IMG/VR virus record: IMGVR_UViG_3300001782_000005
Span: 1 to 64,000 of that record
Strand: one strand, 5' to 3'
Length of the DNA stretch: 64,000 bases
Shown one piece after another: positions 1-27,273 of the stretch (positions are counted from its first letter, which is position 1; each line of letters begins with the position of its first letter). The notes below the pieces were generated by a model. The model did no database searches and was not told the origin of the DNA. It saw only the letters and a list, made by a program, of their open reading frames with translations. The translations under genes were made by a program, and so were the position numbers.

Positions 1-714
1 AAAAAGCTGTCTCATTGGAATGCTAAAAATTTTGGTATCATTCATTCAAAGTCTCCCTATCTATTCTTTTGTGATGCTCATTGTATTATTGGTAGGGACT
101 GTCTTTTCAATATGTTCATATATTACAAGAAGAATGAAGAAGAGTTACACGGGTCGCTTCACCTTCCGATCTCGTACATGATGGAACGCCCCGGTATGGA
201 GTTGATTTATAAACCTAAACTTGATCTTGAGAAAGGAGCGCTACACTATTCATTTAGTAGGTATAGACGACCGTCTGATGGAAAACCTTATAAAGTTCCC
301 TGTATGTCAACCTGCGGGATGTTAATGAGTAGGAAGATAATGGTTGATGAACTTCAAATGTGGCCGAGTGAACTTGGAATCTACGGAGGTGGAGAAAACT
401 TTGTAAACTATTGTTTAGCAGTAATGGGTTATAACGTAAATATTTTTCCAAGACCTGCAATTTATCACTATGCAGAGCAGAGAGGGTATCATTGGAATTA
501 TAATGATTGGTTGAGAAATCGAATCATAGCCTTATATCTTGCTTGTGGTAGAGAGATAGCACAAAGGCTAGTTGATAATGCGAGGGGCCACCAGCAAGTA
601 AAACAAGACATGCTGGAGGATGTAGTAATCAAGTGCAACCCCCAACGAGAACATATTAAAAAGAGAACGTGTGTGGATATTTACGAATGGGTTGAACGCT
701 GGAAAGATTTTTAG
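1..714 (+). CDS. GT-A fold glycosyltransferase, polypeptide GalNAc-transferase (GT27)-like or GT2; 5'-truncated by the window
   Basis: Frame 1 is open from base 1 (KKLSHWNAKNFGIIHSKSPYLFFCDAHCII...), so the gene starts upstream of the window, not at 112. DxH metal motif FCDAH (DAH at 73-81), then KVPCMSTCGMLMSR, YGGGEN (382-399), IFPRPAIYH and RNR, in the order found in ppGalNAc-T catalytic domains. Confidence 0.8.
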   Translation, partial: KKLSHWNAKNFGIIHSKSPYLFFCDAHCIIGRDCLFNMFIYYKKNEEELHGSLHLPISYMMERPGMELIYKPKLDLEKGALHYSFSRYRRPSDGKPYKVPCMSTCGMLMSRKIMVDELQMWPSELGIYGGGENFVNYCLAVMGYNVNIFPRPAIYHYAEQRGYHWNYNDWLRNRIIALYLACGREIAQRLVDNARGHQQVKQDMLEDVVIKCNPQREHIKKRTCVDIYEWVERWKDF

Positions 715-782
715 TTTATTGTATAAATACCTACAAGAGTTTGTACAAATAGATACAAGACCAGTTAATAGGGGGAACAGTT

Positions 783-3700
783 ATGCTTGCAACTTATATA
801 TCCAGCAATCAGTTTCGGGTCTCTGGTGATCGAAGTGCTGAATTTCAAACAGATAGAAGGGTCCGAGCTAATTGCGGGATTGATGGATATAAATATGGTA
901 CGGTACAGTCCGCTAGTTTTAGCGCTGGTTACACAACTGTAACCCTCTTAGAAAGTGAACTAACCTCAAATTTAACTGCAGTTCACTATGGCGTTGTATC
1001 ACCATTTCCTCCTGGTAGTATGCCAAGGATCCCTGGTTTAGCAATTGTCTATGACCAAGAGGTTTCAGCAGTTGAGTTTATTGAAATAACTGGTCTAGCC
1101 TCTGGTCAAATTTATGACCTTTCATTATTACTTACTACCTCTGAAGTAACTGAACTTCGTCTTCAATTTAATGGTGACACTGGTAACAACTATCAGTATG
1201 CTTATCACGATGGTGGAGTTGCTGGTGGTGCGCCATCTCACTCAACTAATCAGAGTGGAGCAATAGATTATATTCAATTTAGTCATAAGTGTGATGTAGG
1301 TACGGGTCGGGTTCAATTTGGAGCAAAACCAATTGATTCAACAGCAGTTATTGTGCACTCATCCTTTTCTACATATCAAGATAGTAATGATTTTATGAAA
1401 AGAGAGTTAGTAGGTTATTACGCTGGTGGTCTTAGTAGTATTAAGATTTATGCTGCTCCAGGTAGCACTAGTTATTTAAGTGGCCGTGTAACCTTAACTG
1501 CACAGGAAGAAGCTATTCCAACCGAGACAACTACGACTACAACGACTGTTTCAACTACACTTCCACCTACTCCTACTACTACGACAAGTACAACTACAAC
1601 GTCAACTACAATTACTCCTGCTCCAACAACCTCTACAACTACGACAACCACTACATCAACTACAGTTACAGTTCCTACGACAACTACAACTACAACGACT
1701 GTAACTACGACGACTACTACTACAACCGCACTTATTACGACTACGACTGCTCCTTCGTGTATCTGGGAAGATCATATGGATGATGGAATAGTAACACCAC
1801 CTTGGACACCAATGGGCGCTCCAGTTGAAGCAGGTACAACTGTGATATTCCAAGGTGTTGGTACAGGTTATATGGATTCAGGACCTGTTCCGTTTGATTG
1901 TTCAAGTTACTACCAGACACAAGCTAGAGTAAGAAATAATGAAAGTGTCTCAAGTCATATTATGAGTCTACTTGATATGAGCAGTGGTCCTCCATATCAA
2001 ACTGTTGTACGAATATGGTCAAATACAACTGGTACATATATTGAATATCAAGATTCATTTGGAACCACTTACTGGTGGGATGGTCTTGCTTGGACAATTG
2101 TTGGACTGACGCCTGCTGGACCACCTATTCCAGATAATATTTACTTTAGATTTGAATTTCAATTTGTCAAAGGGAATTTGATAGTTAATATTTATGACTG
2201 CACTATGGGTATTTTTATATCTACTGGTGCTTCTCCTGTGCCATGTGCTACTCTCATGGGTGGTGGCGGTCCACTTACTGGAGTCTATCTTGGAGCATAT
2301 GCTGGATTCGGACCTACTAATACTTTCTATACAGAAGTTGATTGGTTTGGCTTTGGTTGTATACCAGGTTCTTGGCCGCCTTGTATACCGTACACGACTA
2401 CAACAACCACTACGACTACTACAGCTGCTCCGACTACGACTACGACTCCTCCCGGCGAGTGGGTATCGAAATTTGGTTCTCCGAATTTCTGGGTTTGTGC
2501 TGTTAACTGTACTTGGGATGGAGATTCATATAATGTTGCAGGTCCTGGTCTACAGATTAATGCCGCCGGTACTTGGTATGTCGGTTACAGACCAACAAAG
2601 ATTAGAATTACTGCGACGAACAATGCTTCGAAAGGTTGGACCCTTAGGTTAAGAGATTCTGGAAATTCAACTATAGCAACACTTCTTATACCTAACGGTG
2701 CTTCTCAGGTTGCTGAGGCTGATATTGGTTGGTTTACTAAGAATTTAAATAATATTGTAGATGATACTGCTCCTGGTATTGGTCAAATTGAGAATATTGA
2801 ATTCTGGGAAGTTGGAGCAACGACAACCACCACAACTACTACAACTACAACTACGACATTTATTACTACTACCACAGCTCCTTGGGCGTGGGGCGATCAC
2901 TTTGATAATGGCATAGTGGATACTCCTCCCTGGTCAGTAACAGGTGCTCCGGTTGAAGCAGGAACGACTGTTGTAATAGATGATATTAAGACTAATGAGT
3001 GTCTAGTTACTATGTTTGCTTATGAAACTGGTATGTGGGCGAGATGTCAAGCAAGAGTAAGAACACCTGGATCATCTAGAACTACAGTTATGGGTCTTAC
3101 TGATCCTGGTGGGGCTGGTCCTGTTTTAAGAATTGAGGTAGATCAAGGTTTGTGCTACGTCTCATACTACAGTATGGGAGCAGGACCTGCTTGGCTCTAT
3201 TGGGATGAGAAGAGTATGGGTTGGATACCACCTCCAACTCCTCTTACATCTTTTGTTCCAACTATGAATATGTATTATCGTTATGAACTTCAGTCTGATG
3301 TGAACACAATTTGGGTTAATATTTATAATTGTGCTGGTATACTGTTGTTCACAATTCCGCCATTAGCTGGTGCACCGTGGGCAGATTTACCTCCTGCATA
3401 TCTCTATGTGATGTTGGGTGATTGTGATCCAGTATTCTTTGATAATTACACTGAGGTTGATTGGTTCGGGTTTGATTTGAGGTACTGGCCACCATGTCTG
3501 CCATATACGACTACAACGAGTACAAGTACGACCACTACAACAACTACTGCTATTCCTACTACAACGACAACTTCTCCCCCAGGTGAGTGGGAAGAGAAAT
3601 TTGGATCACCAAGTTTCTGGACATGCGCAGCTAACTGTACTTGGGATGGAGATTCGTATAATGTTGCAGGTCCAGGTTTAGTAATTCAAGCAGCAGGAAC

Positions 3701-4646
3701 TTGGGCAAATGGTTATCGACCAACAAAGATTAGAATTACTGCAACCAATAATGCTTCAAAGGGTTGGAACTTACAGTTAAGAGATAGTGGTGGAACTCCA
3801 CTTGCAACTACGGTGGTTCCGAATGGAGCTAGTCAAGTTGGTGTGGCTGATATAACTTGGGGCGCTAAAGATATGTATAGGATTTATGATTTAGATGCAC
3901 CAGGTACTGGAGAGATTGAGAATATTGAATTCTTCGTAGTTGGGGCTACTACAACCACAACAACAGCTCCTCCGGCTACAACGACTACAACTACCACGAC
4001 ATCTGCTCCAACCACAACGACTACTCCTGTTAGTCCCCTTGTGGCTTGTGATGGTTCTGTTTTTACTGATAATTTCTCAAGTATTACGGCTGATTGGTCT
4101 GAAACAGATGCAAGTAACATTGCATCACCAGGAGCTAACGGTTATGAGCATATTGTTCACGCAATAGATTTTGCTAGATTAATTGGTCAATTTGATATAG
4201 GTGGTGATTTCGATATCTGTCTGGAAGTAGATATATATGACCTTGGTTCAGCTCCCACTATCAGTACTTATATGCAATTTGCCTTGACTGAGGGTGTTAA
4301 AGGTGGTGCAGAAGCTTATGTCTGGATAAGAGGTGACGGAGCTGGTGGATTTGAGTATTATCTAGACGGAACTGATAATTTCAATTCTTGGGGTTCATAT
4401 GGGACAATAGATGCAACCAGTACTCACTATATCAGATTTACTAGAAGTGGAACTACTGTAACTGTTTATGTATGGAACCCAGCTATAGGATGGGAGTGGA
4501 ATGGAGTTCCTGGTGGTCTAGCAAGCACTAGTACATGGGATGTTGACCCCACTCCTACATTACAGTGGAGAGATAATAATCCTCCTACTGATCAAATATC
4601 TGGTACTATGGTCTCATTTAAGATCAATGTTGGAACCAAAATCTAG
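783..4646 (+). CDS. Giant modular Thr-rich putative virion appendage / tail-fibre-like protein (1287 aa)
   Basis: N-terminal ATYISSNQFRVSGD motif of the kind seen at tail-fibre N-termini. Globular modules are separated by poly-Thr linkers, with an internal AB-AB duplication and a C-terminal ConA-like beta-sandwich. Confidence 0.65.
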   Translation: MLATYISSNQFRVSGDRSAEFQTDRRVRANCGIDGYKYGTVQSASFSAGYTTVTLLESELTSNLTAVHYGVVSPFPPGSMPRIPGLAIVYDQEVSAVEFIEITGLASGQIYDLSLLLTTSEVTELRLQFNGDTGNNYQYAYHDGGVAGGAPSHSTNQSGAIDYIQFSHKCDVGTGRVQFGAKPIDSTAVIVHSSFSTYQDSNDFMKRELVGYYAGGLSSIKIYAAPGSTSYLSGRVTLTAQEEAIPTETTTTTTTVSTTLPPTPTTTTSTTTTSTTITPAPTTSTTTTTTTSTTVTVPTTTTTTTTVTTTTTTTTALITTTTAPSCIWEDHMDDGIVTPPWTPMGAPVEAGTTVIFQGVGTGYMDSGPVPFDCSSYYQTQARVRNNESVSSHIMSLLDMSSGPPYQTVVRIWSNTTGTYIEYQDSFGTTYWWDGLAWTIVGLTPAGPPIPDNIYFRFEFQFVKGNLIVNIYDCTMGIFISTGASPVPCATLMGGGGPLTGVYLGAYAGFGPTNTFYTEVDWFGFGCIPGSWPPCIPYTTTTTTTTTTAAPTTTTTPPGEWVSKFGSPNFWVCAVNCTWDGDSYNVAGPGLQINAAGTWYVGYRPTKIRITATNNASKGWTLRLRDSGNSTIATLLIPNGASQVAEADIGWFTKNLNNIVDDTAPGIGQIENIEFWEVGATTTTTTTTTTTTTFITTTTAPWAWGDHFDNGIVDTPPWSVTGAPVEAGTTVVIDDIKTNECLVTMFAYETGMWARCQARVRTPGSSRTTVMGLTDPGGAGPVLRIEVDQGLCYVSYYSMGAGPAWLYWDEKSMGWIPPPTPLTSFVPTMNMYYRYELQSDVNTIWVNIYNCAGILLFTIPPLAGAPWADLPPAYLYVMLGDCDPVFFDNYTEVDWFGFDLRYWPPCLPYTTTTSTSTTTTTTTAIPTTTTTSPPGEWEEKFGSPSFWTCAANCTWDGDSYNVAGPGLVIQAAGTWANGYRPTKIRITATNNASKGWNLQLRDSGGTPLATTVVPNGASQVGVADITWGAKDMYRIYDLDAPGTGEIENIEFFVVGATTTTTTAPPATTTTTTTTSAPTTTTTPVSPLVACDGSVFTDNFSSITADWSETDASNIASPGANGYEHIVHAIDFARLIGQFDIGGDFDICLEVDIYDLGSAPTISTYMQFALTEGVKGGAEAYVWIRGDGAGGFEYYLDGTDNFNSWGSYGTIDATSTHYIRFTRSGTTVTVYVWNPAIGWEWNGVPGGLASTSTWDVDPTPTLQWRDNNPPTDQISGTMVSFKINVGTKI
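1521..1748 (+). repeat. Thr/Ser/Pro-rich low-complexity tract (76 codons)
   Basis: ACN codon run inside the 1287-aa ORF. Confidence 0.95.
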
Positions 4647-4854: not shown

Positions 4855-4893
4855 GGCGGTAACTTATTAGAGGGTTGCCGCCTTTCTTTTTTT
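4855..4893 (+). terminator. Rho-independent terminator
   Basis: 9-bp stem GGCGGTAAC/GTTGCCGCC (one G-U) followed by TTTCTTTTTTT. Confidence 0.8.
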
Positions 4894-4913
4894 AAACTGC
4901 CAGAGGAGTTAAG

Positions 4914-5810
4914 ATGAACCTAATCATAAATTTCACTCCTACCGGCATGATTCCTACCAAGGAAATGACTCCTTATGTACCTATTACAATCAATGAAATT
5001 ATTGAAGATGTACACGAAGCGTACGAAATTGGTATTACTGTTGTTCACCTTCACGCAAGAGACAAGAAGACGGGTGAACCTACATATAAAGCAGAAGTTT
5101 ATCAAGATATTATTGAGGGAATTAGAAAATTTTCAAAAGATTTGGTTATTTGTGTTTCCTTGAGCGGTCGTACATTTAAAGAATTTGAAGAACGATCAGA
5201 GGTTTTACAACTTAATGGTAATGTAAAACCAGATATGGGAAGTTTAACTTTGAGTTCTGTAAATTTTAATTACCAAGCAAGTGTTAGCTCTCCAAAGATG
5301 ATACAGGACCTTGCAAGAGTGATGAAAACTCGTGGCATCCTGGCCGAACTTGAAGCATTTGACTCGGGTATGATCAATTATGCTAAATACTTGGAGAGAA
5401 AAGACTTATTAGATCCCCCTCACTATTTTAATTTATTATTTGGTAATATTGCGTGTGCTCAGGCAACTCTATTACATATGGGAGTTATGATAAATGATTT
5501 ACCCAATTGGTCTTATTGGAGTGCGGCTGGTGTAGGTGATGCACAATCTATGGTAAATTCAATTGCTATTGCCTACGGTGGTGGAGTAAGAGTTGGCCTT
5601 GAAGATAATATTTGGTACGACAAAGGCAGGACTAAACTTGCTAAAAATTCTGACCTATTAAAACGTGTTCATAATTTAGCTGAGGCAAATGAAAGAGAAC
5701 TTATGACTTCTGAAGAATTTAGAAGATTCCTAGTTCTTCAACAAGATGGGAATTATGGAAGAATTTGTGGTGGAGTGAAACTAGAAGGTTCTGATCAAAT
5801 AGGTTGGTAA
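4914..5810 (+). CDS. kce: 3-keto-5-aminohexanoate cleavage enzyme family (BKACE / DUF849)
   Basis: IINFTPTG start, VVHLHARD Zn-binding motif, PDMGSL, ELEAFD, GVRVGLEDN; length about 300 aa; SD GAGGAG. Confidence 0.9.
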   Translation: MNLIINFTPTGMIPTKEMTPYVPITINEIIEDVHEAYEIGITVVHLHARDKKTGEPTYKAEVYQDIIEGIRKFSKDLVICVSLSGRTFKEFEERSEVLQLNGNVKPDMGSLTLSSVNFNYQASVSSPKMIQDLARVMKTRGILAELEAFDSGMINYAKYLERKDLLDPPHYFNLLFGNIACAQATLLHMGVMINDLPNWSYWSAAGVGDAQSMVNSIAIAYGGGVRVGLEDNIWYDKGRTKLAKNSDLLKRVHNLAEANERELMTSEEFRRFLVLQQDGNYGRICGGVKLEGSDQIGW

Positions 5811-5811
5811 A

Positions 5812-6783
5812 ATGATATACGGAGATTATGAGATTTTTCACTATCATCCTAATATGATAGATCAGGTTGCAAAAGTGATAAAATACCTTTGGGGCGGAAA
5901 ACGCGATTTTAGAATTGACCATCTCAAATGGAAACATTATGAAAATCCTTATTCAAATTTTCCACACGGAATAGTTGCTTTATATAATAGAGAAGTGGTT
6001 GGTTTTAGAGGATATTCTCCTATGAAATGGAGAGTTAAAGGACAAGAGTTTAAAACTTTAATTGCTGGAGATACAGTTGTAGATCAGAAACATCGTATGA
6101 AAGGTTTATCAGTGGCGATGGGTCAAGCAGCAAATAAATATCAATCAAACTATAAGTTCCTTCTAAATTTTACCTCAGGAGGTACTTCAACACCAGGTTA
6201 TTTAAAATTGGGTTTTAGAAAATTTTTGGAGAAAAGTTATTATACAAGGCGTGCTTTTAAAGAAGATATAGAGATAAAAGGCGATTTTAGTGGGGTACTC
6301 TTTTTTGAAATTCCAGACCTAAAGAAAATTTGTGATCTTATTTTGAAAGAGGATAACTTTGATAAGATTACTCCAGTTCGTACTGAAGAATACTTCCAAT
6401 GGAAGATGAGAAATTCTAAAAATAAATATTTATTTTTTGGTTATAAAGACAGAAGCTACGTTATTTTCTCAACTCAACCAAATGGTAATAATGGTTATAT
6501 AGTTGATTACGTAGTTGAAAATGTTGAAGACCTCGACAATATTCTTCGTTTTATACTAAAGACAAAACCGTTTAATTTCACTATGGTTTATAATTATGGA
6601 GTTTGTAATAAGCTCTCTAAAGTTTTGAAAGGACTGAATTTTGAAGAATCAAGTATGACATGGCATTTACTAATACGACCTGTGAAAAAAGATTTCAGTG
6701 AAAGAGATTGGTTTGTTGAAGGAGTTGATACCCGAAAGATCGAGAACTGGAACATGAGAGCTATCTGTTCAGATGATGCTTAG
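5812..6783 (+). CDS. GNAT-family N-acyltransferase
   Basis: HLKWKHYENP, VVGFRG, GDTVVDQKHRMKGL (acyl-CoA loop), FLLNFT, GYLKLGF; starts 1 nt after the kce stop (translational coupling). Confidence 0.75.
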   Translation: MIYGDYEIFHYHPNMIDQVAKVIKYLWGGKRDFRIDHLKWKHYENPYSNFPHGIVALYNREVVGFRGYSPMKWRVKGQEFKTLIAGDTVVDQKHRMKGLSVAMGQAANKYQSNYKFLLNFTSGGTSTPGYLKLGFRKFLEKSYYTRRAFKEDIEIKGDFSGVLFFEIPDLKKICDLILKEDNFDKITPVRTEEYFQWKMRNSKNKYLFFGYKDRSYVIFSTQPNGNNGYIVDYVVENVEDLDNILRFILKTKPFNFTMVYNYGVCNKLSKVLKGLNFEESSMTWHLLIRPVKKDFSERDWFVEGVDTRKIENWNMRAICSDDA

Positions 6784-6787
6784 ATTT

Positions 6788-6796
6788 AGAACAAAT
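6788..6796 (+). promoter_or_regulatory. RGAACAAA motif, candidate late promoter (representative copy)
   Basis: Recurs at 15184, 18294, 23026, 27275, 28321, 43872, 62463 (+) and about 43630, 59467, 61457 (-), nearly always shortly upstream of a gene. Confidence 0.6.
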
Positions 6797-18290: not shown

Positions 18291-18420
18291 GTTGGAACAA
18301 ATCAATAAAGGAGATAGGATCTAGATGAAGATTTACAAAAAGGTAGTCATAGACATTGAATCAAGTAAGATCTTGGAAGAAGTGTCTTACGACTACAACG
18401 GTCCTATCGCTCAAATGCAG
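18291..18420 (+). repeat. Copy 1 of a ~130-bp dispersed repeat (upstream motif + SD + 32-codon leader)
   Basis: GTTGGAACAAA...GGAGATAGGATCTAGATGAAGATTTAC...GGTCCTATCGCTCAAATGCAG; near-identical copy at 23023-23154. Confidence 0.9.
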
Positions 18421-21400
18421 GGTTCCTGGGTATCACATTTTCTTAATGATGCAAGTGGATGGCAGTGTTATTTTCAGTGTAGTTGGACTGGTTCTTCTTG
18501 GGTACCAAATACTGTCAACATGGGTATTAGAACCAATGTTAGTGCAGTATGGCAAATAGGTTATAGACCTGAGAAATTTAGAGTAACAGTTACTAATATT
18601 ACAGATACTCCAGTACAGTTCTCTCTTACAGATACTGGTTTTACTCCTATTGGTACAACCCCTTCGATTACTGTACCAGGAACGTATGAAGGTACTATTA
18701 GTTGGGCAGGAAATGATATATACCACCTAGACGAGATTCAGTCATCTACTGGTTTTGAAATAACAAATATAGAATTTTTCGAGGGAGCTACAACTACAAC
18801 TACAACAGTAGATCCTTGTTTGTTTCCCCCTGAGTTGATAGTTGATGGAACTGCAGCTCAGGGTAATATAGAGTTTCTAGGAGAACTTGATTGTTGGTAC
18901 TTTGATGCTACGTCAGCTAACAGATATATAATTGAGACGCATTTTGATGGCGGAATTAGTGATACAGTAATAAGTTTAAATGGGCCAGATGACCCAGACC
19001 TTTTTATAGAAGAAAATGATGACGGTGGCGTGGGGACTATGTCCAAGATTGATAGATACTTGGGCATAGGGCGCTATTATGTAAAGGTCTGGGACTATGA
19101 CAACGATGATACTGGTACGTATTTAATTGACATCCGGACTGGTGTTTGGCCAACAACAACAACTACCTCAACTACAAGTACTAGCTCAACGACGACCACA
19201 ACTACTTATCATCAATCGTATCCATATGACGATGGTTGTGGTTGCTTAGCTTCTACTCCACCAGGATTTGGAAATACTTCGGCCCCTAAACCTTGGCACT
19301 TCTATGAACCAGGTTTTGACAGACATTGGGTAGGTAATCCTCCACACTATGCATACTCTGATGATCAAGGTAGAACATGGACTGATTTTCATTTAACTGG
19401 TCCTGAAACTGCTACTGGTTGGGCCATGGTTGATCTTAGTCCAGCTAATGCTTATTTCTATATTTCAAATGCAACAGATGGAATTAATTTTGGCTGGATG
19501 GCCATAAGCAAAGCAACTGGTGCAGCTACTTTTATGGCGGCCGGTACAGCAGCAGGCACAAGAAGTTCATCTATTGTTCAAATTGCTGCTCCTGCTGGAG
19601 TTCAATTTATAACGATGGGGTTAATACCTGGGCCGGCCTTCTCACTGGGAGAGCATAATGATATATTTGGCGCTTACTGGTACGCTAGTAGGGGGACAAT
19701 AGCAGCGCCATATTCTGGTCAAACTGAGTTAATTAGACTTGATTACGATAGAGCAATGTCGTTTGCAAGAACGACTAATGGAGTATATAGCGCAATAGCC
19801 CATATTGTGAGCGATCCACCAGGAGGTCCACCCGTGTGGGGTATTGACGGCCTTACTGGAGTTCAACATATTACAGAGACTGCTGGAATGGACTTTACTG
19901 ATCCTGGTGGGTGGCCAAATAGAGTAAGCGCCTCTGTAGATCCAACTGGCAATGTTCACGTCTTTTTCAGCAAGTTTACTCCTCCTGAAGGTATATACTA
20001 TTCTCGGTGGTCATTTGTATCAGGATGGAGCACGGCGGTTAGAGTTTATGATGATACTCCAGGAAATGTCTTCTCTTTCTATAACCAGCGTTTAGCTCCT
20101 CCAGGTAATGTTGTAGGTTTTGTCACTATCGTAAGCGCCCCTTCTGGATGTCCCGATGATCCCTTCAATCCACCATATTATACCAACTATGTAGGGAGAG
20201 TAAGTACAACTGGAGGGTTTACTTGGAATGAAGGTTGGTTCTGCGGTCAATGCTGGGGTGGAGAATTAGTACCACCTTCTCTTCCTTACCCCTTAACAGC
20301 AGTAGATCAAGTGTCAAGTCTCAACCACTATGGGTGGGATACTAGATGCCCAGCATATGCATATTTAGACGGTTTAACTAGTAGATTTATACATTTTGGA
20401 GAACTTACTTATGGTATAACAACTACTACTATTACTACCACTACGTCAACTACTACTACAAGCACAATAACAACTACCACTAGTACGACAACTACTACAA
20501 CTGCACCGTGTCTAGGTTTAGAGCAAGACGAATTTAATGATACTGTAATAGATCCCAGGTGGGCACTCCAAGATGAAAGAGGAGGAACATTCTCTGAATC
20601 TGGCGGGACACTTCATGTCCATTCAGGTGCAGATGGTTGTAATGCAATAGATCCATGTACTCCAACTTATATTGCTCAATGTGAACCAGCAGGAACAGAA
20701 TTTGATGTTTGGACTAAAATTATAGTTCCTTCATTTACGGGTCAATTTCAAGAGTTTGGTCTCATGTTCAGAGTTTGGGATCAGGAAGATGTCTATGCGA
20801 AAGTTGGAGGTAGAATTTACGGCGGTAATTTATATGCGTTTGCTCTATATTCAAACGTAGGTACTATTAACGATGAAGAGATCCCAATTGTAGCATCTGA
20901 ATTTTGGGTGAGGATACGCCGTAAGTATATTCTTGGGACTCCCCATTTCTCTTATTTTTATTCACTAACTGAACCTATAGTGGAAGGCGATTGGACTCTC
21001 TTTAGTACTATTGATCTATTATTCTATAATGGTTCTAAAGGTTGGGTTGGTCACTATGCTTCATATCCTCTGCCTGCAACAACAACAACGACAACAACGA
21101 CTACTACATCTACATCCACAACAGGTACGGTTATAACCACGACTACTTATTTTGAATTTATAGGAGATTGTCCATGTGGTCAAACTGAGATGCCGCCATA
21201 TGATAGTAATTTTGGTGTCACACATAGGCTGTACAATAGTAATTGGGGACACACTTACTGGGTTGGTTATGACTCTTCTGGTAATGAAAATCCAGGAATA
21301 ATGAGGGATTACACAGACTTAGGCCAGACTTGGCTGATGGACGGTACTGATGCTAAGATTATTAGGTGGTCCTCTCTAGATCTTGGTATTACTATTACTG

Positions 21401-23019
21401 ATACTTATAGTTTTCACCTATCTTATAATAAAGCAAGGGGAGAGTTCTTTGTTAGAGATACGCTTAATAATTACTATCTCTTTCAAATTTTTATGATTGG
21501 TGAGTGTTATTTTGCTGGAACGATTATACCAGTTACTGTATTACCTGGAGGTTCAGCGGATAAATCTGATATTTGGGTTTCTCCCACTCTTAATAATTGG
21601 TTAGTTTACAAAACTTCAACTAATAGAATTTATCATGCGCCATTAGATACCGCTGATCCATTTACATATCCTCATGGTAGAATAACCAACTGGACGTTAG
21701 TTAAAGATTTTGCTAATGGTGCTAATGGAGATAATATAATTGTTCGGAGCAATACTCAACTAGTTGCTATATCTCTAAATAGTGGAATTACCGGTCGTAA
21801 AGAATATTCTTATACAAATGACATAACCACATGGTCAGCTAATGCAGATATTATACCTCAAACGCCATGGTATGACCCTTCTGATTATCCAACTTCGTGG
21901 AGATTTGTGGTTGATACTAGAGGTTATGTACATGGGTTCTTTGCTTATCAAGGTTCAGGCACTAACCCAATACCAGGATCTCAGATTTATCACACGAGAT
22001 TTACAAGTTCTAGTTGGTCAAGTCCTCAATTAATCGGTACAGTAAATATTGGTTTAGCAACTATTGATGGTTCTTTTGCTCAATTCTTACATAGGCAAGT
22101 ATGGGATCCGGAGAAATATCCTGGTTGCTTAGTTTATAGATATCATGGCGGACCTGGCGATTATCACGCAGGTTTCTGGAGTAATGATTTTGGAGATACA
22201 TGGCATTCATATGGTCCTGGTGATATTTGTTTAGATCTAGATTATAATCATACTCAATGGTATGAAACTCGTGAGAGAGAACACATTCCTCCATGTGGTA
22301 TAAATTACAGTTTTCCAGTTGGTATTGAGCATACTGAAAGAATGCCATGCCATAGTTTAGTTGAAGAGTGGTGGACTAGTACTACTTCAACAACTACTAC
22401 AACTTCTACTACTACGACTTCGGTAACTTGGTTTACTACGACAACTACCACAACGTCGACAACTACTACTATTACCACGACAACAACTACTACTACTTCA
22501 ACTACTACTACTTCTATAACTTGGTTTACTACAACAACTGCTCCTCCATCAATCGAAACGATTGATCCTAATGGAGAATATATAGATTATGATTGGTCGG
22601 CAGATCCTGGTCCTGGTCATTATACAATGGTAAATGATTATGGTTCTCCGACACAAGATAATAGTAGGGTTTATCCAACTTATTATGATGCAGGTGAAGG
22701 TTGGGAATTTGAAAACCCAACTTTGGGTACAACTATTGTTGCTATTAAAGTAAAATTAAGAATTAGAACTGACAATGCTCCAACGACTTTTAAAGTCAGA
22801 TGTAGAATATGGGATGGAGCTATACAAATAGGTTCTAATTGGGATATCGAGACTGATAGCACCGGTAATTATGCAGAGTATAGTAACACATGGTCTAGTT
22901 TAAGTTTGACTCCGGCACAACTTTCAGATTTTAGAGTTACACTAACTAATGGTCATGCAGCACCCGGAAATCATTTGGGATCAGTTTCTGCTGCACAAGC
23001 TGACTTATATTATGTTTAG
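18325..23019 (+). CDS. Giant modular Thr-rich putative virion protein (1564 aa)
   Basis: 32-aa leader shared with the next gene; GYRP domain; PPC-like domain (about 18840-19137: DTVISLNGPD...ENDDGG...GRYYVKV); two BNR/Asp-box-like propeller regions (SDDQGRTW, SNDFGDTW); Thr linkers. Confidence 0.7.
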   Translation: MKIYKKVVIDIESSKILEEVSYDYNGPIAQMQGSWVSHFLNDASGWQCYFQCSWTGSSWVPNTVNMGIRTNVSAVWQIGYRPEKFRVTVTNITDTPVQFSLTDTGFTPIGTTPSITVPGTYEGTISWAGNDIYHLDEIQSSTGFEITNIEFFEGATTTTTTVDPCLFPPELIVDGTAAQGNIEFLGELDCWYFDATSANRYIIETHFDGGISDTVISLNGPDDPDLFIEENDDGGVGTMSKIDRYLGIGRYYVKVWDYDNDDTGTYLIDIRTGVWPTTTTTSTTSTSSTTTTTTYHQSYPYDDGCGCLASTPPGFGNTSAPKPWHFYEPGFDRHWVGNPPHYAYSDDQGRTWTDFHLTGPETATGWAMVDLSPANAYFYISNATDGINFGWMAISKATGAATFMAAGTAAGTRSSSIVQIAAPAGVQFITMGLIPGPAFSLGEHNDIFGAYWYASRGTIAAPYSGQTELIRLDYDRAMSFARTTNGVYSAIAHIVSDPPGGPPVWGIDGLTGVQHITETAGMDFTDPGGWPNRVSASVDPTGNVHVFFSKFTPPEGIYYSRWSFVSGWSTAVRVYDDTPGNVFSFYNQRLAPPGNVVGFVTIVSAPSGCPDDPFNPPYYTNYVGRVSTTGGFTWNEGWFCGQCWGGELVPPSLPYPLTAVDQVSSLNHYGWDTRCPAYAYLDGLTSRFIHFGELTYGITTTTITTTTSTTTTSTITTTTSTTTTTTAPCLGLEQDEFNDTVIDPRWALQDERGGTFSESGGTLHVHSGADGCNAIDPCTPTYIAQCEPAGTEFDVWTKIIVPSFTGQFQEFGLMFRVWDQEDVYAKVGGRIYGGNLYAFALYSNVGTINDEEIPIVASEFWVRIRRKYILGTPHFSYFYSLTEPIVEGDWTLFSTIDLLFYNGSKGWVGHYASYPLPATTTTTTTTTTSTSTTGTVITTTTYFEFIGDCPCGQTEMPPYDSNFGVTHRLYNSNWGHTYWVGYDSSGNENPGIMRDYTDLGQTWLMDGTDAKIIRWSSLDLGITITDTYSFHLSYNKARGEFFVRDTLNNYYLFQIFMIGECYFAGTIIPVTVLPGGSADKSDIWVSPTLNNWLVYKTSTNRIYHAPLDTADPFTYPHGRITNWTLVKDFANGANGDNIIVRSNTQLVAISLNSGITGRKEYSYTNDITTWSANADIIPQTPWYDPSDYPTSWRFVVDTRGYVHGFFAYQGSGTNPIPGSQIYHTRFTSSSWSSPQLIGTVNIGLATIDGSFAQFLHRQVWDPEKYPGCLVYRYHGGPGDYHAGFWSNDFGDTWHSYGPGDICLDLDYNHTQWYETREREHIPPCGINYSFPVGIEHTERMPCHSLVEEWWTSTTSTTTTTSTTTTSVTWFTTTTTTTSTTTTITTTTTTTTSTTTTSITWFTTTTAPPSIETIDPNGEYIDYDWSADPGPGHYTMVNDYGSPTQDNSRVYPTYYDAGEGWEFENPTLGTTIVAIKVKLRIRTDNAPTTFKVRCRIWDGAIQIGSNWDIETDSTGNYAEYSNTWSSLSLTPAQLSDFRVTLTNGHAAPGNHLGSVSAAQADLYYV

Positions 23020-23022: not shown

Positions 23023-23154
23023 GTTGGAACAAACTGATAAAGGGGAGATAGGATCTAGATGAAGATTTACGAAAAGGTAGTCATAGATATTGAATCTGGT
23101 AAAATACTGGATGAAGTGTCCTACGACTATGAAGGTCCTATCGCTCAAATGCAG
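23023..23154 (+). repeat. Copy 2 of the ~130-bp dispersed repeat
   Basis: Same upstream motif, SD and leader coding sequence as 18291-18420, with scattered substitutions. Confidence 0.9.
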
Positions 23155-26100
23155 ACAACTACCACTACTATGACTTGCCCACCAACCACAGCAGATTGGA
23201 GCACCTGTTTTAGCGAGTATCCTCTTGGAGCTCAACCATCTGATTGGACGGAGCGCTGGTATCCCGCTAGCGTAGAATATAGAGTAGTTGATGGTTCGGC
23301 TGGTCGTATTGGTGGTCAGTCGATGCGTGAACGCATTTCAGTAGCACCATTTGAGAAATCTATTTCTTGGGATACGCCAGGATTTTTAACTGACGTTGAA
23401 GTGCTTGCTAGGGTTAAGTGTTTAAGTACGACTGGAGATCCAGCTGTTATTGTTAGAGGTTCGGGTGCAGATAGTGGTAAATATGGTTTCTATGCTAAAC
23501 TTAATGATGGATTAAATTTAGAAGTTGGCTATTGGAATAATTCTGCTTTATGGGGGATTCCTTTAGCAGATAAGAGATTCTATCATTACGTTCAGACATG
23601 GTATTGGATCAGATTTAGAGTATATGATAATACTATATTAAAAGCAAAGGTATGGGAAGATGGAGATCCGGAGCCTTCTGACTGGATGATAGAATTATCG
23701 ACTGGATCTGGTCCATCCTTCTCTGGTTGGGTAGGAGTAGGTGGAGTTGGAGCTACTGATAATTTCTATGATGTTTATGAGGTTTGGGATTTAAGTTCAC
23801 TAACGACTACTACAAGTACAACTACTACAACTACAACGAGTACAACTGGAAGCACAACAACTTCAATTACATATTTTACAACCACCACAACTATGCCTCC
23901 ATTTCCAACTACCACAACTGCTCCTCCATTTGAGTGGCTCTGTTGTGATAGATGCCTTCAAAGATCAATGCCGGGGTCAGATGGTTCATGGTCAAGTCTA
24001 AATTTTATAACTTATATTCCTCCAATACAGAGATTCTTTTACTGGTTTTATTATTCACCAGGTTTTAGAGTTCTTAAATATTCAGATGACTTTGGTTTGA
24101 CATGGACTAGTCAAGCGACAAAAGTTTCTTCTGGTCGTTTTTGTGTTGATCCCTATGGTTTGGAATTATACGTAATAGCAGGAACTACACTATGTAAAAT
24201 CCTATCTGGAAACCCTGAACTCTTTTGGCAAACTACACAGACAATACCTGCGGCTCCGGCAGGAACTCAGCATTTAATACTGACAAGACCTAGTGGCGAT
24301 CCTCTTATTGGAGGTTTTCTCATTGCTAATGCTGGAGGGGGGAATGTTACTGTTTATCAACTTGCCGATGAAAATATCTCTATAGCATGGCAATTACGTC
24401 TTAACTGGGCGCATGATCCTCTTGAGACTGTTACTAATAGTGATATTGCATGGTGTCAGACTGGAAGTGGAGGAGCAACCCTCATTATCAAAGAGGGCAA
24501 TAGATTTATGTACGCTGAGTGGGCTGGAAGTTTCTTCCAACCAGTTATACATCCAGCAGAGGTTTCAGATTCAGATTCAACATCAATTCAGAATTGGCAA
24601 GTAGTCGCAGATGACTATGGTCAAACTCACCTTTTCTGGAGAGATGAAGTTGATGGGAATTTACACTATCAAAGATATAGCGGGTCAACTTGGTTAGTAA
24701 ATAAAGTTACTATAGGTCCTATAAGTAATAAGTGGGAAGCTCAATATATAAATAGTGAGTTATTTGGAGTCTCTTATGGTATTCTATTTGCTAGGGAAGC
24801 AACGGTTGGAGGTAAAGGGTACTATATTGATACCGAATTTTCTACTGATTTTATAGAGGGGATTAATTGTTGTGATATAGACTTTAGCTTTATAGATCCA
24901 CCTCAACAACTTACTTTAAAACATAGTCATGTTGTTCCGCCGTGTGGGTATATGATTGTACGAGAGAACATATTTAGTACATCCCACGAATTTCAAATAT
25001 TTGATCCTGTTAGTCAGGAGCAGGCACTAACTACAACAAGTACAACTACGACCACAACTACTACTACAACAACTACAACTACAACTACTACAACTACTAC
25101 AACACCTCCACCTGATTTCGAAGTTGAGTTTGATTTCTTTAGATTTTGGAGTCCTGCGACTACAACCACAATAACAGTTACTACTCCTGCTACTACGACT
25201 ATTCCGCCTCTTCCAACAACTACAACTACTATACCACCATATATTCAATTTATTGTTGAGTTTGATGATTTTGAAGGAACTCCGCTAACCACTACAACTA
25301 CTACTACTACAACACTTACTACTACTACAACCACCTTTACTACCACTACGACAGCAACAACAACTACCGTAACAAGTACTGTAACGACAACTACTCCACC
25401 TCCAAGGAACTTAGAGTATAATAAAGATATAATTGGGACGATTGAAGAAGCAGATGCTGAATTTGAAGAATTGGTTAATACACCTCCAGAATCGAGAGAT
25501 GATAGAAAAGCTAAACTTGAGATATTTAGAGAGAATTGGTCTAGACTATTCAATAGCCCACCTTACCAAGTCGATCCAGATGCTGCTGAGACAATTCTAG
25601 CTGCAATAAATCCAGATTTAAAGAATGATATTGATAGCTGGTTTGATGCCGGAGATGATGCAACCCTAATTGAATATCTATTTACAGATTTACACCAGTG
25701 GATACTTGAGCATTTTGGTGCATATCCAAATCTTGGTTCAATTGCTGCGGGCATTCCATTCTTAATTAAGCAAGTTATTGATTTCTTTAAACCTTATAGA
25801 GCAAGACTCGCTTTCTTTGAATCAGCAGCAATTTTCGATGATGCTCTGTTAGATTCTATTAGACTTGACGACGCATCTTCGATGATTATTTATCAGACGG
25901 TTGTTGATACCCCAGTTGCTGATAGTATTCCATGTTGTCCATATCCAGAGACGTCTCCTTGTGATTCAACAGCTGCTCTATATTATGCAAGAGAATATTA
26001 TGACTGTGGTTCATATTATGATAGTGGAATTGTAGATGATTTAGACGACGTACGTCTTACAGTGCGTCAGGATGTACACGATTTCTACTCCTGCCTACCA

Positions 26101-27273
26101 GATGGTTCAGCAGTAATTGACTACAACTTCGATACAACAGCAACAATAACTTTGAGTACTACACTGCCTCCGGAAATTTGTCAGTGGACTGGTCAAGAAG
26201 AACAGTGGGTTGAAGAAGAAGGACAGTGGATAGATGATGAGAGTCAATGCGTCCCAATTGAGGTACTGTTAACCCAATGGATTAACAATAGTCCGCATTG
26301 GCAGACCCAGTGGGTCGATGAATCTCTCCAATGGGTAGATCAAGAATATACAACTCTGACATTACCTCCTATCCCGGATCCAACACCTCCGGATGAACCT
26401 TTCTATCTATATGGTTATATGGCAGGTGGTTGGCAAGATTTTGATGAAGAAGGTTTATTTGATTGTATGGGTAGTAAGGATATTGTTCAAATTTATATAC
26501 AAGATTCGACCGCGATAATTACCACGACTACAACAGTTACGTCAACAACCTCTACTACAAGTACAGTTACTACTACAACTACTACGACTACTACTACAAC
26601 CTCCACAACATCAACAACTACAACTACCTGCTGGGGTCCTATTGGAGACTCATTTGCTGGACCAGACTATAGTCCGCCTAATCCAGCACTTTGGACTGAC
26701 GTGACGTTTGGCGGAACTGGTAATGAAGTTAGAATTCTAAATAATAAACTCAATCTATACATGTCTGGAACTCCTAACCCGGAAGTTGACTCTGTCTTCA
26801 ATCTTGGAGTTGGAGACTTTGATGTTCAAGTCGATTATGAGATACTCCAAAGTACAATTTCAGAAGACTGGTATATAATTATGTCGGGTTGGGATCAAGC
26901 TGCTATTGGATTCTGTAATGGTACTTATGTTGGAGTAATGAGAGGTGTCTGGAGTGGAGTGCATGAATATCGCCTTTACTACTGTAGTGGCAGTTCGTTT
27001 GGATATTTAGGTGCTGTTGCTACTGCTGATATGTCAGGAAAGTTACGTTTAGCAAGAGTAGGTAGTATATGGTCGACTTATTATTGGAGTGGCGGATCTT
27101 GGGTTCTAATTGCTCAGTGGACACAAGTAACACACCCAGTAGGCAATGTGGTTTATCCATTGACGTTCCAACTTAGAAATTTAACTGGTTCTGCTCCGAT
27201 ACTTGAGATTGCGCTTGATAACTTCTGTTTAGTTAGTTATATAACCACGACAACTACAACTACACCGCCATAG
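23059..27273 (+). CDS. Giant modular Thr-rich protein containing a baseplate-wedge-like segment (1404 aa)
   Basis: Shared leader, ConA-like domain, propeller region (SDDFGLTW), acidic helical segment with VIDFFKPYRARL (FFKPYRARL at 25783-25809), QW repeats, C-terminal ConA-like domain. Confidence 0.65.
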   Translation: MKIYEKVVIDIESGKILDEVSYDYEGPIAQMQTTTTTMTCPPTTADWSTCFSEYPLGAQPSDWTERWYPASVEYRVVDGSAGRIGGQSMRERISVAPFEKSISWDTPGFLTDVEVLARVKCLSTTGDPAVIVRGSGADSGKYGFYAKLNDGLNLEVGYWNNSALWGIPLADKRFYHYVQTWYWIRFRVYDNTILKAKVWEDGDPEPSDWMIELSTGSGPSFSGWVGVGGVGATDNFYDVYEVWDLSSLTTTTSTTTTTTTSTTGSTTTSITYFTTTTTMPPFPTTTTAPPFEWLCCDRCLQRSMPGSDGSWSSLNFITYIPPIQRFFYWFYYSPGFRVLKYSDDFGLTWTSQATKVSSGRFCVDPYGLELYVIAGTTLCKILSGNPELFWQTTQTIPAAPAGTQHLILTRPSGDPLIGGFLIANAGGGNVTVYQLADENISIAWQLRLNWAHDPLETVTNSDIAWCQTGSGGATLIIKEGNRFMYAEWAGSFFQPVIHPAEVSDSDSTSIQNWQVVADDYGQTHLFWRDEVDGNLHYQRYSGSTWLVNKVTIGPISNKWEAQYINSELFGVSYGILFAREATVGGKGYYIDTEFSTDFIEGINCCDIDFSFIDPPQQLTLKHSHVVPPCGYMIVRENIFSTSHEFQIFDPVSQEQALTTTSTTTTTTTTTTTTTTTTTTTTTPPPDFEVEFDFFRFWSPATTTTITVTTPATTTIPPLPTTTTTIPPYIQFIVEFDDFEGTPLTTTTTTTTTLTTTTTTFTTTTTATTTTVTSTVTTTTPPPRNLEYNKDIIGTIEEADAEFEELVNTPPESRDDRKAKLEIFRENWSRLFNSPPYQVDPDAAETILAAINPDLKNDIDSWFDAGDDATLIEYLFTDLHQWILEHFGAYPNLGSIAAGIPFLIKQVIDFFKPYRARLAFFESAAIFDDALLDSIRLDDASSMIIYQTVVDTPVADSIPCCPYPETSPCDSTAALYYAREYYDCGSYYDSGIVDDLDDVRLTVRQDVHDFYSCLPDGSAVIDYNFDTTATITLSTTLPPEICQWTGQEEQWVEEEGQWIDDESQCVPIEVLLTQWINNSPHWQTQWVDESLQWVDQEYTTLTLPPIPDPTPPDEPFYLYGYMAGGWQDFDEEGLFDCMGSKDIVQIYIQDSTAIITTTTTVTSTTSTTSTVTTTTTTTTTTTSTTSTTTTTCWGPIGDSFAGPDYSPPNPALWTDVTFGGTGNEVRILNNKLNLYMSGTPNPEVDSVFNLGVGDFDVQVDYEILQSTISEDWYIIMSGWDQAAIGFCNGTYVGVMRGVWSGVHEYRLYYCSGSSFGYLGAVATADMSGKLRLARVGSIWSTYYWSGGSWVLIAQWTQVTHPVGNVVYPLTFQLRNLTGSAPILEIALDNFCLVSYITTTTTTTPP

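What the first reader, a model, noticed from the sequence alone, without database searches (positions are those of the whole stretch)
1..27273. Candidate phage-encoded mucin-type O-glycosylation system: ppGalNAc-T-like transferase next to five giant poly-Thr proteins
Seen: the truncated first gene reads FCDAHC...KVPCMSTCGMLMSR...YGGGENF...IFPRPAIYH...RNR. The next 26 kb encode about 8,000 aa of adhesin-like modules joined by Thr/Ser/Pro tracts up to 164 aa, often as TTTPP. Established: polypeptide GalNAc-transferases (GT27) have FLDSHCE, TPMIAGGLF, WGGEN, IVPCSRVGH and RN in this order, and they modify Thr/Ser near Pro in mucin PTS domains; glycosylated mucin tracts extend roughly 0.25 nm per residue. 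Inference: the phage O-glycosylates its own appendage proteins, giving stiff, protease-resistant stalks (the longest tract about 40 nm) that display lectin-like domains, i.e. a mucin-like virion coat.
Basis: partly seen in the sequence, partly recalled or inferred. Interest (0 to 1): 0.92.

Follow-up and report, generated by a model that had tools for sequence, protein, structure and literature searches.

The report
Phage mucin-like fibres with GalNAc-transferase-like enzyme
A 277-kb uncultured phage carries an enzyme shaped like the animal enzymes that start mucin glycosylation, placed directly before five giant proteins full of threonine tracts, so it probably sugar-coats its own fibres, which has not been described for phages and has not been shown experimentally here.

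Summary
Window 1-714 is the 3' part of a 313-aa glycosyltransferase, cut only because a circular assembly was linearised. Five ORFs follow (1287, 2781, 992, 1564 and 1404 aa). They hold 27 globular modules joined by Thr/Ser/Pro tracts totalling 1032 aa, the longest 164 aa.

The transferase is a GT-A enzyme. Its nearest solved relatives, by profile and by predicted fold, are exclusively polypeptide GalNAc-transferases (GT27): Foldseek top 50, E 2e-16, TM 0.70-0.77. The DxH motif, the distal His and the GGGEN motif are invariant. It lacks the lectin domain and membrane anchor, so it is GT27-like rather than a member.

It is the last gene of a soluble cassette (GT4-like, GT9-like, two methyltransferases) that recurs in about 70 viral contigs beside tail genes. 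The family is absent from GenBank phages and PHROGs.

Loci with the enzyme hold 5 times more Thr/Ser-tract ORFs per Mb than random viral loci, and 37 versus 0 ORFs with long tracts. The converse fails: most viral poly-Thr proteins lack this enzyme nearby.

Self-glycosylation of fibre proteins is the best explanation (about 0.55). Sugar, acceptor and virion location are untested.

The parts
1..714 (+). 3' part (237 codons) of a 313-aa soluble GT-A glycosyltransferase, GT27-like and without a lectin domain. The full gene is L001:9773-10714.
   Evidence: Translation. Contig ends overlap. Pfam PF00535, 1.2e-8. Invariant D101, H103, H232 and G205-E208. Profile versus PDB. Model and Foldseek.
719..760 (+). 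Two copies of a 22-nt repeat containing TGTAYAAATA, between the GT and giant 1. Possibly a promoter.
   Evidence: TRF and sequence. Function is inferred only.
783..4646 (+). Giant 1, 1287 aa: 7 modules and 173 aa of Thr/Ser/Pro tracts.
   Evidence: The N-terminal 250 aa are about 92% identical to the L014 orthologue, while distal modules have diverged and tract lengths differ.
4914..5810 (+). Beta-keto acid cleavage enzyme (BKACE, Kce-like).
   Evidence: Pfam PF05853, 6e-77. NCBIfam Kce 1.5e-66, below the cut-off. Present in L004/L014, absent in L293.
5812..6783 (+). GNAT-like acetyltransferase, 323 aa.
   Evidence: Pfam PF13527, 1.6e-5.
6836..15181 (+). Giant 2, 2781 aa: 8 modules (Laminin_G_3, two SPRY, DUF1349 ConA-like, a 725-aa module) and 532 aa of tracts, including runs of 143 and 165 aa.
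   Evidence: The phrog_10080 match is shared with a tract protein of L029.
15216..18194 (+). Giant 3, 992 aa: 3 modules with ConA-like folds and 53 aa of tracts.
18325..23019 (+). Giant 4, 1564 aa: 5 modules and 109 aa of tracts. It shares its N-terminal 29 aa with giant 5.
23059..27273 (+). Giant 5, 1404 aa: 4 modules and 165 aa of tracts.
6787..6795 (+). First of six TRGAACAAA motifs that lie just upstream of G2, G3, G4, G5, p303 and p222. The others start at 15183, 18293, 23025, 27274 and 28320.
   Evidence: 11 matches in the window against 2.6 expected, and no shuffle reached 11. Positions.
28355..29023 (+). 222-aa virion structural protein. It is context: same strand and same upstream motif as the giants.
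   Evidence: phrog_19418, 4e-12.
29124..31106 (+). Tail sheath. It is context and shows that the giants sit at the head of a structural block.
   Evidence: phrog_19666 2e-70, plus Pfam sheath domains.

Best explanation
The window belongs to a roughly 277-kb uncultured myovirus. A cassette of soluble enzymes lies upstream of the window's first base in the circular genome. It contains a GT4-like retaining transferase, the C-terminal half of a heptosyltransferase-like GT9 protein, two methyltransferases and further proteins of unknown function, and it ends with the GT27-like transferase.

Proposed mechanism, all of it inferred:
- During late infection, in the host cytoplasm, the GT27-like enzyme uses a host UDP-sugar and a Mn2+ ion held by D101, H103 and H232.
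- It puts the first sugar on Thr/Ser hydroxyls of the long disordered tracts of the five giant proteins encoded directly downstream.
- The other transferases and methyltransferases then extend and cap the glycan.
- The giants are modular fibres or adhesins with ConA-like, SPRY and orphan modules strung on glycosylated, extended, protease-resistant spacers. They are attached to the virion through conserved N-terminal parts.

What is shown: the anatomy, the fold and motif relation to GT27, the conserved cassette, and the statistical association with Thr/Ser-tract ORFs next to tail genes.
For: 1. Fold and motifs.
- The family profile hits only ppGalNAc-Ts over positions 4-240.
- The AlphaFold model has pLDDT 94.8.
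- The Foldseek top 50 in the PDB are all GT27, with E down to 2e-16 and TM 0.70-0.77 over about 330 columns.
- The DxH motif, the distal His and GGGEN are invariant in 48 homologues.

2. Other transferases are not protein-type.
- The GT4-like partner resembles MshA/BshA, not GtfA.

3. Arrangement.
- The order GT then giants is kept in three related phages at 86-88% GT identity.
- It is also kept in a 33%-identity relative, L005, where a poly-Thr ORF starts 12 nt after the GT ORF ends.

4. Association with tracts.
- GT loci hold 42.9 tract ORFs per Mb against 8.1 in 80 random viral loci (p 2e-6).
- ORFs with at least 50 tract residues number 37 against 0 (p 3e-8). The window's own phage and duplicates were excluded.
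- Tract-positive loci occur in all major clades of the GT tree.

5. Position of the tract ORFs.
- They lie at the end of the tail block, and some are true tail proteins: phrog_1101 at 1e-64 and 8e-50.

6. Cellular location.
- No signal peptide, membrane segment, flippase or polymerase is present.

7. Evidence that the giants are structural.
- They lie on the same strand directly before a virion protein and the tail sheath.
- They share the upstream motif TRGAACAAA with those genes.
- Giant 1 has a conserved N-terminus and a variable distal part.
- Giants 4 and 5 share their N-terminal peptide.

8. Selection on the tracts.
- Thr codons in the tracts are mixed (ACT 308, ACA 256, ACG 120, ACC 75), so selection acts on the protein and this is not a DNA repeat.

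9. Precedent.
- Mycobacteriophage virions are glycosylated by phage-encoded transferases (Freeman 2023, as cited in PMC12582341 and PMC12894461).
Against: - There are no biochemical or proteomic data.
- Identity to GT27 is only 15-18%, and the lectin domain that guides GT27 on mucins is missing.
- 31 of 68 distinct family members have no tract ORF within 10 kb.
- One clade that sits next to a DNA polymerase and a portal gene is mostly tract-negative.
- Within +-4.5 kb the enrichment is not significant, 9/70 against 6/80. The cassette itself fills that space.
- Of 120 viral loci holding a run of at least 15 ACN codons (85 with a Thr/Ser-tract ORF), none has a true family member nearby. Poly-Thr proteins therefore clearly exist without this enzyme close by.
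- The loci are phylogenetically and perhaps ecologically non-independent.
- The giants have no homology to known virion proteins.
Confidence: 0.55

Rival explanations
1. The cassette does glycosylate phage structural proteins, but not the tracts. Its targets would be other virion proteins such as capsid or tail tube tails, as in mycobacteriophages. The poly-Thr tracts would then be bare flexible spacers, and adjacency would only reflect shared placement in the late/structural region.
For: Poly-Thr proteins are common in viral contigs with no family member nearby. 31 of 68 GT loci have no tract ORF within 10 kb. Enrichment within +-4.5 kb is not significant.
Against: ORFs with tracts of at least 50 aa number 37 against 0 between GT and random loci. 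The GT ORF is followed within 12-62 nt by a tract ORF in L005, L013, L014 and L055, which belong to different lineages. The closest structural relatives of the GT act on exactly such Thr/Ser/Pro tracts.
Confidence: 0.15
2. The cassette modifies a host envelope glycan (LPS, capsule or S-layer glycan) during infection or lysogeny, for example for superinfection exclusion. The giants would be unrelated.
For: Many phage GT2-type enzymes do this (own knowledge). The cassette contains a heptosyltransferase-like protein. One family member lies in a Desulfatiglans prophage.
Against: The cassette has no membrane-anchored transferase, flippase, polymerase or priming enzyme, and no TM segment except weak single hydrophobic windows. 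It sits beside tail genes rather than an integrase. The GT's fold neighbours are peptide-modifying, not lipid- or polymer-modifying.
Confidence: 0.1
3. The transferases decorate hypermodified phage DNA bases, as the T-even glucosyltransferases do, to evade restriction.
For: DNA glycosylation is a classic role of phage transferases (own knowledge). In one clade the GT sits next to a DNA polymerase gene.
Against: No base-hydroxymethylase was seen in the cassette. Several transferases plus sugar-type O-methyltransferase-like enzymes point to an oligosaccharide. The GT27-like fold has no known DNA-modifying member (own knowledge). This rival was not searched exhaustively.
Confidence: 0.07

Closest known systems
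Polypeptide N-acetylgalactosaminyltransferases (CAZy GT27; e.g. human GalNAc-T2, Drosophila PGANT9, Toxoplasma GalNAc-T3)
   Same: It has a GT-A catalytic domain with the same overall fold (TM 0.70-0.77). It shares the DxH motif plus distal His metal triad and the GGEN-type Gal/GalNAc-T motif. It sits next to Thr/Ser/Pro-rich tracts.
   Different: Sequence identity is 15-18%. There is no ricin-type lectin domain, and a roughly 70-aa helical C-terminus takes its place. There is no signal anchor, so it is cytoplasmic rather than in the Golgi lumen. It is viral or prokaryotic. The donor sugar is unknown.
Mycobacteriophage virion glycosylation (Che8, Corndog, Myrna; Freeman et al. 2023)
   Same: Phage-encoded transferases, with a methyltransferase, are proposed to O-glycosylate the phage's own structural proteins in the cytoplasm.
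   Different: The transferases are not homologous: tblastn of this GT against 50,697 phage records found nothing. There the targets are short C-terminal tails of capsid and tail-tube subunits (own knowledge; the paper is not held). Here they would be tracts of up to 164 aa in giant modular proteins.
Serine-rich-repeat adhesin glycosylation in Gram-positive bacteria (GtfA/GtfB plus extending transferases)
   Same: Very long Ser/Thr-rich tracts of fibrillar adhesins are O-glycosylated in the cytoplasm by a cassette of several soluble transferases.
   Different: The initiator there is a GT-B enzyme, GtfA, with a chaperone partner and an accessory Sec export system. The GT-B protein here resembles MshA/BshA and not GtfA, and there are no export genes.
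Glycosylated fibrils of giant viruses (Mimivirus and relatives)
   Same: Virus-encoded clusters of transferases, methyltransferases and acetyltransferases decorate surface fibrils. BFVD matches to this GT include Megaviridae GT-A proteins.
   Different: Those are eukaryotic viruses. The BFVD matches are weaker than the GT27 matches (E 1e-12, TM at most 0.67). The fibril proteins are unrelated.
Thr/Pro-rich interdomain linkers of bacterial glycoside hydrolases and cellulosomal proteins
   Same: Globular carbohydrate-binding or β-sandwich modules are joined by Thr/Pro tracts, and some of these linkers are O-glycosylated in the native host (own knowledge).
   Different: Those proteins are secreted. 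Their linkers are tens of residues, not up to 164. No dedicated adjacent transferase cassette is present.

Membership tests
GT27 (ppGalNAc-T) | GT-A catalytic domain whose nearest structural relatives are GT27 | tested here: met
   The Foldseek top 50 PDB matches are all GT27, with E 2e-16 to 1e-12 and TMq 0.67-0.77. The model has pLDDT 94.8.
GT27 (ppGalNAc-T) | DxH motif plus a distal His as Mn2+ ligands | tested here: met
   D101, H103 and H232 are invariant in 48 sequences. HMMER aligns them to the DSH motif and the VGH histidine of PGANT9. The geometry in the model was not inspected.
GT27 (ppGalNAc-T) | Gal/GalNAc-T motif (WGGEN-like) | tested here: met
   Y204-G205-G206-G207-E208 is invariant, and position 209 is N or H across the family. 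The motif aligns with the WGGEN region, with a one-residue offset.
GT27 (ppGalNAc-T) | C-terminal ricin B-type lectin domain | tested here: not met
   The protein ends at residue 313, and residues 243-310 are helices. Pfam gives no ricin or CBM13 hit.
GT27 (ppGalNAc-T) | Type II membrane anchor and lumenal location | tested here: not met
   A Kyte-Doolittle scan finds no hydrophobic segment.
GT27 (ppGalNAc-T) | Transfers GalNAc from UDP-GalNAc to Ser/Thr of polypeptides | not testable with these tools
   This needs an enzyme assay. The only support is indirect association with Thr/Ser-tract ORFs.
GT27 (ppGalNAc-T) | Sequence similarity at family level | tested here: inconclusive
   The single sequence against the PDB gives E 0.04 and the profile gives 1.5e-7. 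This is remote homology, so the protein would not be auto-classified as GT27.
Pfam Glycos_transf_2 (PF00535) | Score above the gathering cut-off | tested here: met
   35.5 bits against a cut-off of 23.3 for the full-length protein. The window fragment alone scores 21.3, which is below it. PF00535 also covers GT27 catalytic domains (own knowledge), so this does not discriminate.
Mycobacteriophage-type virion glycosylation system | Homologous transferases | tested here: not met
   tblastn of the GT against 50,697 GenBank phage records found no match, and there is no PHROG match.
Mycobacteriophage-type virion glycosylation system | Phage-encoded soluble transferases plus a methyltransferase next to structural genes | tested here: met
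Mycobacteriophage-type virion glycosylation system | Glycan found on virion proteins | not testable with these tools
   This phage is known only from metagenomes.
SRR-adhesin GtfA/GtfB pathway | GtfA-like GT-B initiating enzyme | tested here: not met
   The top matches of the c1 model are MshA, BshA and GlgM. The profile hits only the GT4 E-x7-E region.
Autotransporter heptosyltransferases (Aah/TibC, GT9-like) | Full-length GT9 fold acting on Ser/Thr of an adhesin | tested here: inconclusive
   The 266-aa protein matches only the C-terminal part of LPS heptosyltransferases, at 1e-7. It was not modelled.

The most novel reading that the evidence does not exclude
This phage-specific family is a genuine polypeptide O-glycosyltransferase. 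It has at least 629 members in metagenomes, about 70 viral contigs and almost no cellular genomes. If so, mucin-type initiation (a GT27-like enzyme acting on long Thr/Ser tracts) exists outside eukaryotes as a cytoplasmic, lectin-less form that phages use to build glycosylated fibres. The family would also be a candidate relative of the ancestor of eukaryotic GT27.
Probability: 0.4. Interest if true: 0.9.

Novelty: new variant of a known kind. Interest (0 to 1): 0.78.

Why it matters
GT27 enzymes are regarded as a eukaryotic invention (own knowledge). Phage virion glycosylation has so far been shown only in mycobacteriophages, and with unrelated enzymes.

A widespread phage family with the GT27 catalytic core, embedded in a conserved glycan-building cassette beside tail genes and mucin-like proteins, would have four consequences:
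- It would extend mucin-type chemistry to viruses of prokaryotes.
- It would offer a small, soluble, lectin-free enzyme for making O-glycopeptides.
- It would give a testable explanation for the many poly-Thr proteins in environmental phage genomes.
- It would bear on how phage fibres resist proteases, stick to surfaces or evade recognition.

The enzyme is short, predicted with high confidence, and can be assayed in E. coli laboratory strains, so the hypothesis is directly testable.

Tried and rejected
Searches that found nothing:
- Megablast of window 1-12000 against GenBank phages.
- PHROGs for the giants and the GT.
- A homologue search with the N-terminal domain of giant 1 found a single close relative among 5.8 billion proteins, so nothing could be learned about virion attachment.
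- NCBIfam gives no named family for the GT.
- Literature searches found no paper linking a phage GT27-like enzyme with poly-Thr proteins.
- The tRNA scan was empty.

Steps that failed or were unavailable:
- A lineage-matched control using the tail host-specificity protein failed because the alignment had no stretch conserved enough to scan with.
- The Freeman 2023 paper is not held. I used it only through citing papers and my own knowledge.

Tests that came out negative or against the hypothesis:
- Reverse association: loci chosen for a run of at least 15 ACN codons do not carry the GT or c1 family.
- The length-matched +-4.5 kb test was not significant.

Readings considered and rejected:
- The tracts are not simple DNA slippage repeats. 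Codons are mixed, and TRF finds only degenerate arrays at 62-88% match.
- The GT4-like partner is not the protein-specific initiator, because it has no GtfA-like features.
Full report
**What the window is**

The window is the first 64 kb of IMG/VR contig UViG_3300001782_000005, which is 277,131 bp long. It is a phage:
- tail sheath at 29124-31106;
- baseplate wedge at 49295-51895;
- T4-type large terminase at 57793-59421.

The terminase is at most 30% identical to any GenBank phage, the best being Flavobacterium phage immuto. The DNA has no megablast match. The contig's two ends overlap by 93 nt inside the first gene, so the assembly is circular and the 'truncated' gene is intact.

**Checking the observation**

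Five large ORFs follow on the same strand. They total 8028 aa with 12-22% Thr. They contain 27 globular modules of 81-725 aa and Thr/Ser/Pro tracts summing to 1032 aa. The longest pure Thr/Ser run is 164 aa. No other ORF in the remaining 37 kb has such a tract.

Thr codons in the tracts are a mixture of all four ACN codons, and TRF sees only degenerate arrays. The tracts are therefore kept at the protein level.

- A BKACE gene and a GNAT-like gene sit between giants 1 and 2.
- Only 9 of 27 tracts are followed by PP.
- Only some modules are recognisably lectin-like: Laminin_G_3, two SPRY and several ConA-like DUF1349/GH43_C2 modules.

**The transferase**

The full-length gene is L001:9773-10714 (313 aa) and is 100% identical where it overlaps the window. 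It passes Pfam Glycos_transf_2, but that model does not separate GT2 from GT27.

A search of 5.8 billion proteins found 629 homologues, typically at about 50% identity. Almost all come from metagenomes. An alignment of 48 has these invariant residues: D101 and H103 (DxH), H232, Y204-GGG-E208, and R248-N249.

Evidence that the fold is GT27-like:
- A profile of the alignment, searched against all PDB sequences, puts ppGalNAc-Ts first (PGANT9 1.5e-7, then T10, T7, T4, T12, T1 and T2). The alignment spans positions 4-240.
- Bacterial GT2 structures (TarP, heparosan synthase) match only positions 1-125.
- AlphaFold2 with this alignment gives pLDDT 94.8 and pTM 0.93.
- The 50 best Foldseek matches in the PDB are all GT27 chains: E 2e-16 to 1e-12, TM 0.67-0.77, about 330 aligned columns, 13-19% identity.
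- In the viral structure library the best matches are generic GT-A proteins with weaker scores.

The enzyme nevertheless lacks the ricin-type lectin domain and any membrane anchor. I therefore call it GT27-like, not a GT27 member.

**Where the family lives**

- It has no match in 50,697 GenBank phage records and none in PHROGs.
- Only 7 loci were found among one genome each of 185,579 prokaryotic species. Most are Desulfobacterota MAGs, and two are archaeal MAGs.
- By contrast, IMG/VR holds 72 loci.
- The three bacterial or metagenomic contexts I opened are all phage or prophage regions.

Clustering of all ORFs in 80 loci shows a conserved order:
1. A tail host-specificity protein.
2. A GT4-like protein of about 430 aa, present in 64 of 80 loci.
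3. A variable set: a second GT4, a GT2-like protein, a hexapeptide acetyltransferase, two kinds of methyltransferase (one with a weak rhamnosyl-O-methyltransferase-like match), an epimerase and a GT9-like protein.
4. The GT27-like enzyme.
5. In one lineage, DNA polymerase A and the portal gene.

In the window's genome the cassette contains the GT4-like protein, a GT9-like C-terminal half, two methyltransferases, a radical SAM/SPASM protein and a pectate-lyase-like β-helix protein. None has a convincing membrane segment.

The GT4-like partner models well (pLDDT 89). It resembles MshA/BshA-type retaining transferases, not the protein-specific GtfA. The GT27-like enzyme is therefore the only cassette member with a specific resemblance to a polypeptide transferase.

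**Is the enzyme linked to Thr/Ser tracts?**

Evidence for a link:
- Two close relatives of this phage keep the cassette, the GT and several tract-rich giants in the same order. These are L004/L014 (GT 86% identical) and L293 (87% identical).
- In a 33%-identity relative on a 16-kb contig, a poly-Thr ORF begins 12 nt after the GT ORF ends.
- Of 67 further viral loci, 36 have an ORF with a Thr/Ser tract of at least 15 aa within 10 kb. All of these are on the GT strand.
- As background I sampled 80 viral loci with an arbitrary 14-mer. Six were positive.

The control loci are shorter, so I recomputed per base after removing the window's own phage and duplicates:

| Measure | GT loci | Random viral loci | p |
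|---|---|---|---|
| Tract ORFs per Mb | 42.9 | 8.1 | 2e-6 |
| ORFs with at least 50 tract residues | 37 | 0 | 3e-8 |

- Positive loci are spread over all major clades of a maximum-likelihood GT tree.
- The tract ORFs sit mostly just before the cassette, at the end of the tail block, or just after the GT.
- Some are genuine tail proteins (phrog_1101 at 1e-64 and 8e-50). One shares phrog_10080 with giant 2.

Evidence that limits the link:
- Within +-4.5 kb, the same mean length as the controls, the difference is not significant (9/70 against 6/80). The cassette fills that space.
- 31 of 68 distinct GTs have no tract ORF within 10 kb.
- Among 120 viral loci chosen for a run of at least 15 ACN codons, none carries a true member of the GT or GT4-like families nearby.
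- For at least one 'negative' GT contig (L067), the poly-Thr gene turned up elsewhere on the same contig (L174).

The enzyme predicts tracts. Tracts do not predict the enzyme.

**Are the giants virion parts?**

This is indirect.
- They lie on the same strand directly upstream of a PHROG 'virion structural protein' and the tail sheath.
- The motif TRGAACAAA occurs 11 times in the window against 2.6 expected. Six copies sit immediately upstream of giants 2-5 and the two following genes, which suggests co-regulation.
- Giant 1 compared with its orthologue shows the pattern typical of receptor-binding fibres. The N-terminal 250 aa are about 92% identical. Tract positions are kept but lengths change by indels. 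Distal modules have diverged or been reshuffled.
- Giants 4 and 5 share their first 29 residues at 86% identity and nothing else there, as alternative fibres docking on one site often do.
- None has a signal peptide.
- No module matches a known virion protein family, and the N-terminal domain of giant 1 is an orphan.

**Mechanism proposed**

The shown and inferred steps are kept apart in the Best explanation section. In short, the Thr/Ser tracts of phage fibre proteins would be O-glycosylated in the cytoplasm late in infection. The GT27-like enzyme would start the glycan and the cassette would extend and methylate it. I put this at about 0.55.

Rivals:
- Glycosylation of other virion proteins, with the tracts as bare linkers: 0.15.
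- Modification of a host envelope glycan: 0.10.
- DNA modification: 0.07.
- The remainder is unassigned.

**Comparison and novelty**

Phage self-glycosylation has a precedent in mycobacteriophages (Freeman 2023, cited in PMC12582341 and PMC12894461), but with unrelated enzymes and short C-terminal tails. Cytoplasmic glycosylation of long Ser-rich adhesins is known in Gram-positive bacteria, with a GT-B initiator. Extracytoplasmic glycosylation of Ser/Thr-rich disordered regions is known in streptococci (PMC12041528). Giant viruses glycosylate their fibrils.

What is new here is a phage-specific, lectin-less, soluble relative of the mucin-initiating enzymes, together with its conserved cassette and its association with mucin-like tracts. 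I found no paper describing it. I rate it a new variant of a known kind, with interest 0.78.

Noticed in passing
window 6787, 15183, 18293, 23025, 27274, 28320 (+); also 43623 (-): The motif TRGAACAAA sits 20-45 nt upstream of six consecutive genes, giants 2-5 and the next two. It occurs 11 times in the window against 2.6 expected. It may be a late-promoter-like element of this phage lineage.
   Followed up: partly
window 719-760: Two 22-nt direct repeats containing TGTAYAAATA, which resembles the T4 late promoter TATAAATA, lie between the GT and giant 1.
   Followed up: no
window 4914-6783: A BKACE (Kce-like, 6e-77) and GNAT-like gene pair is inserted between giants 1 and 2. It is kept in relative L004/L014 but absent in relative L293. 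Its role is unknown; it might make an acyl group for the glycan.
   Followed up: partly
L001:3101-4024 (upstream cassette of the same genome); window 42187-43188 (-): A radical SAM/SPASM protein resembling peptide or protein maturases lies inside the glyco cassette, and a second radical SAM gene lies elsewhere in the window. The giants contain 1-2% Cys, so another post-translational modification is conceivable.
   Followed up: no
L001:769-2181: A 470-aa pectate-lyase-like β-helix protein, the tailspike or depolymerase type, lies just upstream of the cassette.
   Followed up: no
window 18325-18420 and 23059-23145: Giants 4 and 5 share an N-terminal 29-residue peptide at 86% identity and are otherwise unrelated at that end. 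It may be a common docking peptide.
   Followed up: partly
window 1 and the contig end (L006, L058): The contig ends overlap by 93 nt inside the GT gene. This indicates a circular or terminally redundant 277-kb genome, so the window's first gene is split only by linearisation.
   Followed up: yes
L073:6407-10950: One viral contig carries three paralogues of the GT27-like enzyme within about 4.5 kb, plus two tract-rich ORFs 7-8 kb downstream.
   Followed up: no
L173-L292: Runs of at least 15 ACN codons occur in more than 120 IMG/VR contigs, including several giant-virus MAGs (GVMAG). Almost all lack this GT family nearby. Poly-Thr proteins are thus a wider, unexplained feature of environmental viruses.
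   Followed up: partly
L169, L170: Family members occur on contigs binned as Thermoplasmatota and Thorarchaeota MAGs. These could be archaeal viruses or binning errors.
   Followed up: no
window 27368-28279: A 303-aa protein between giant 5 and the virion protein ends in a CxxC...CxxC zinc-ribbon-like tail. No family match was found.
   Followed up: no
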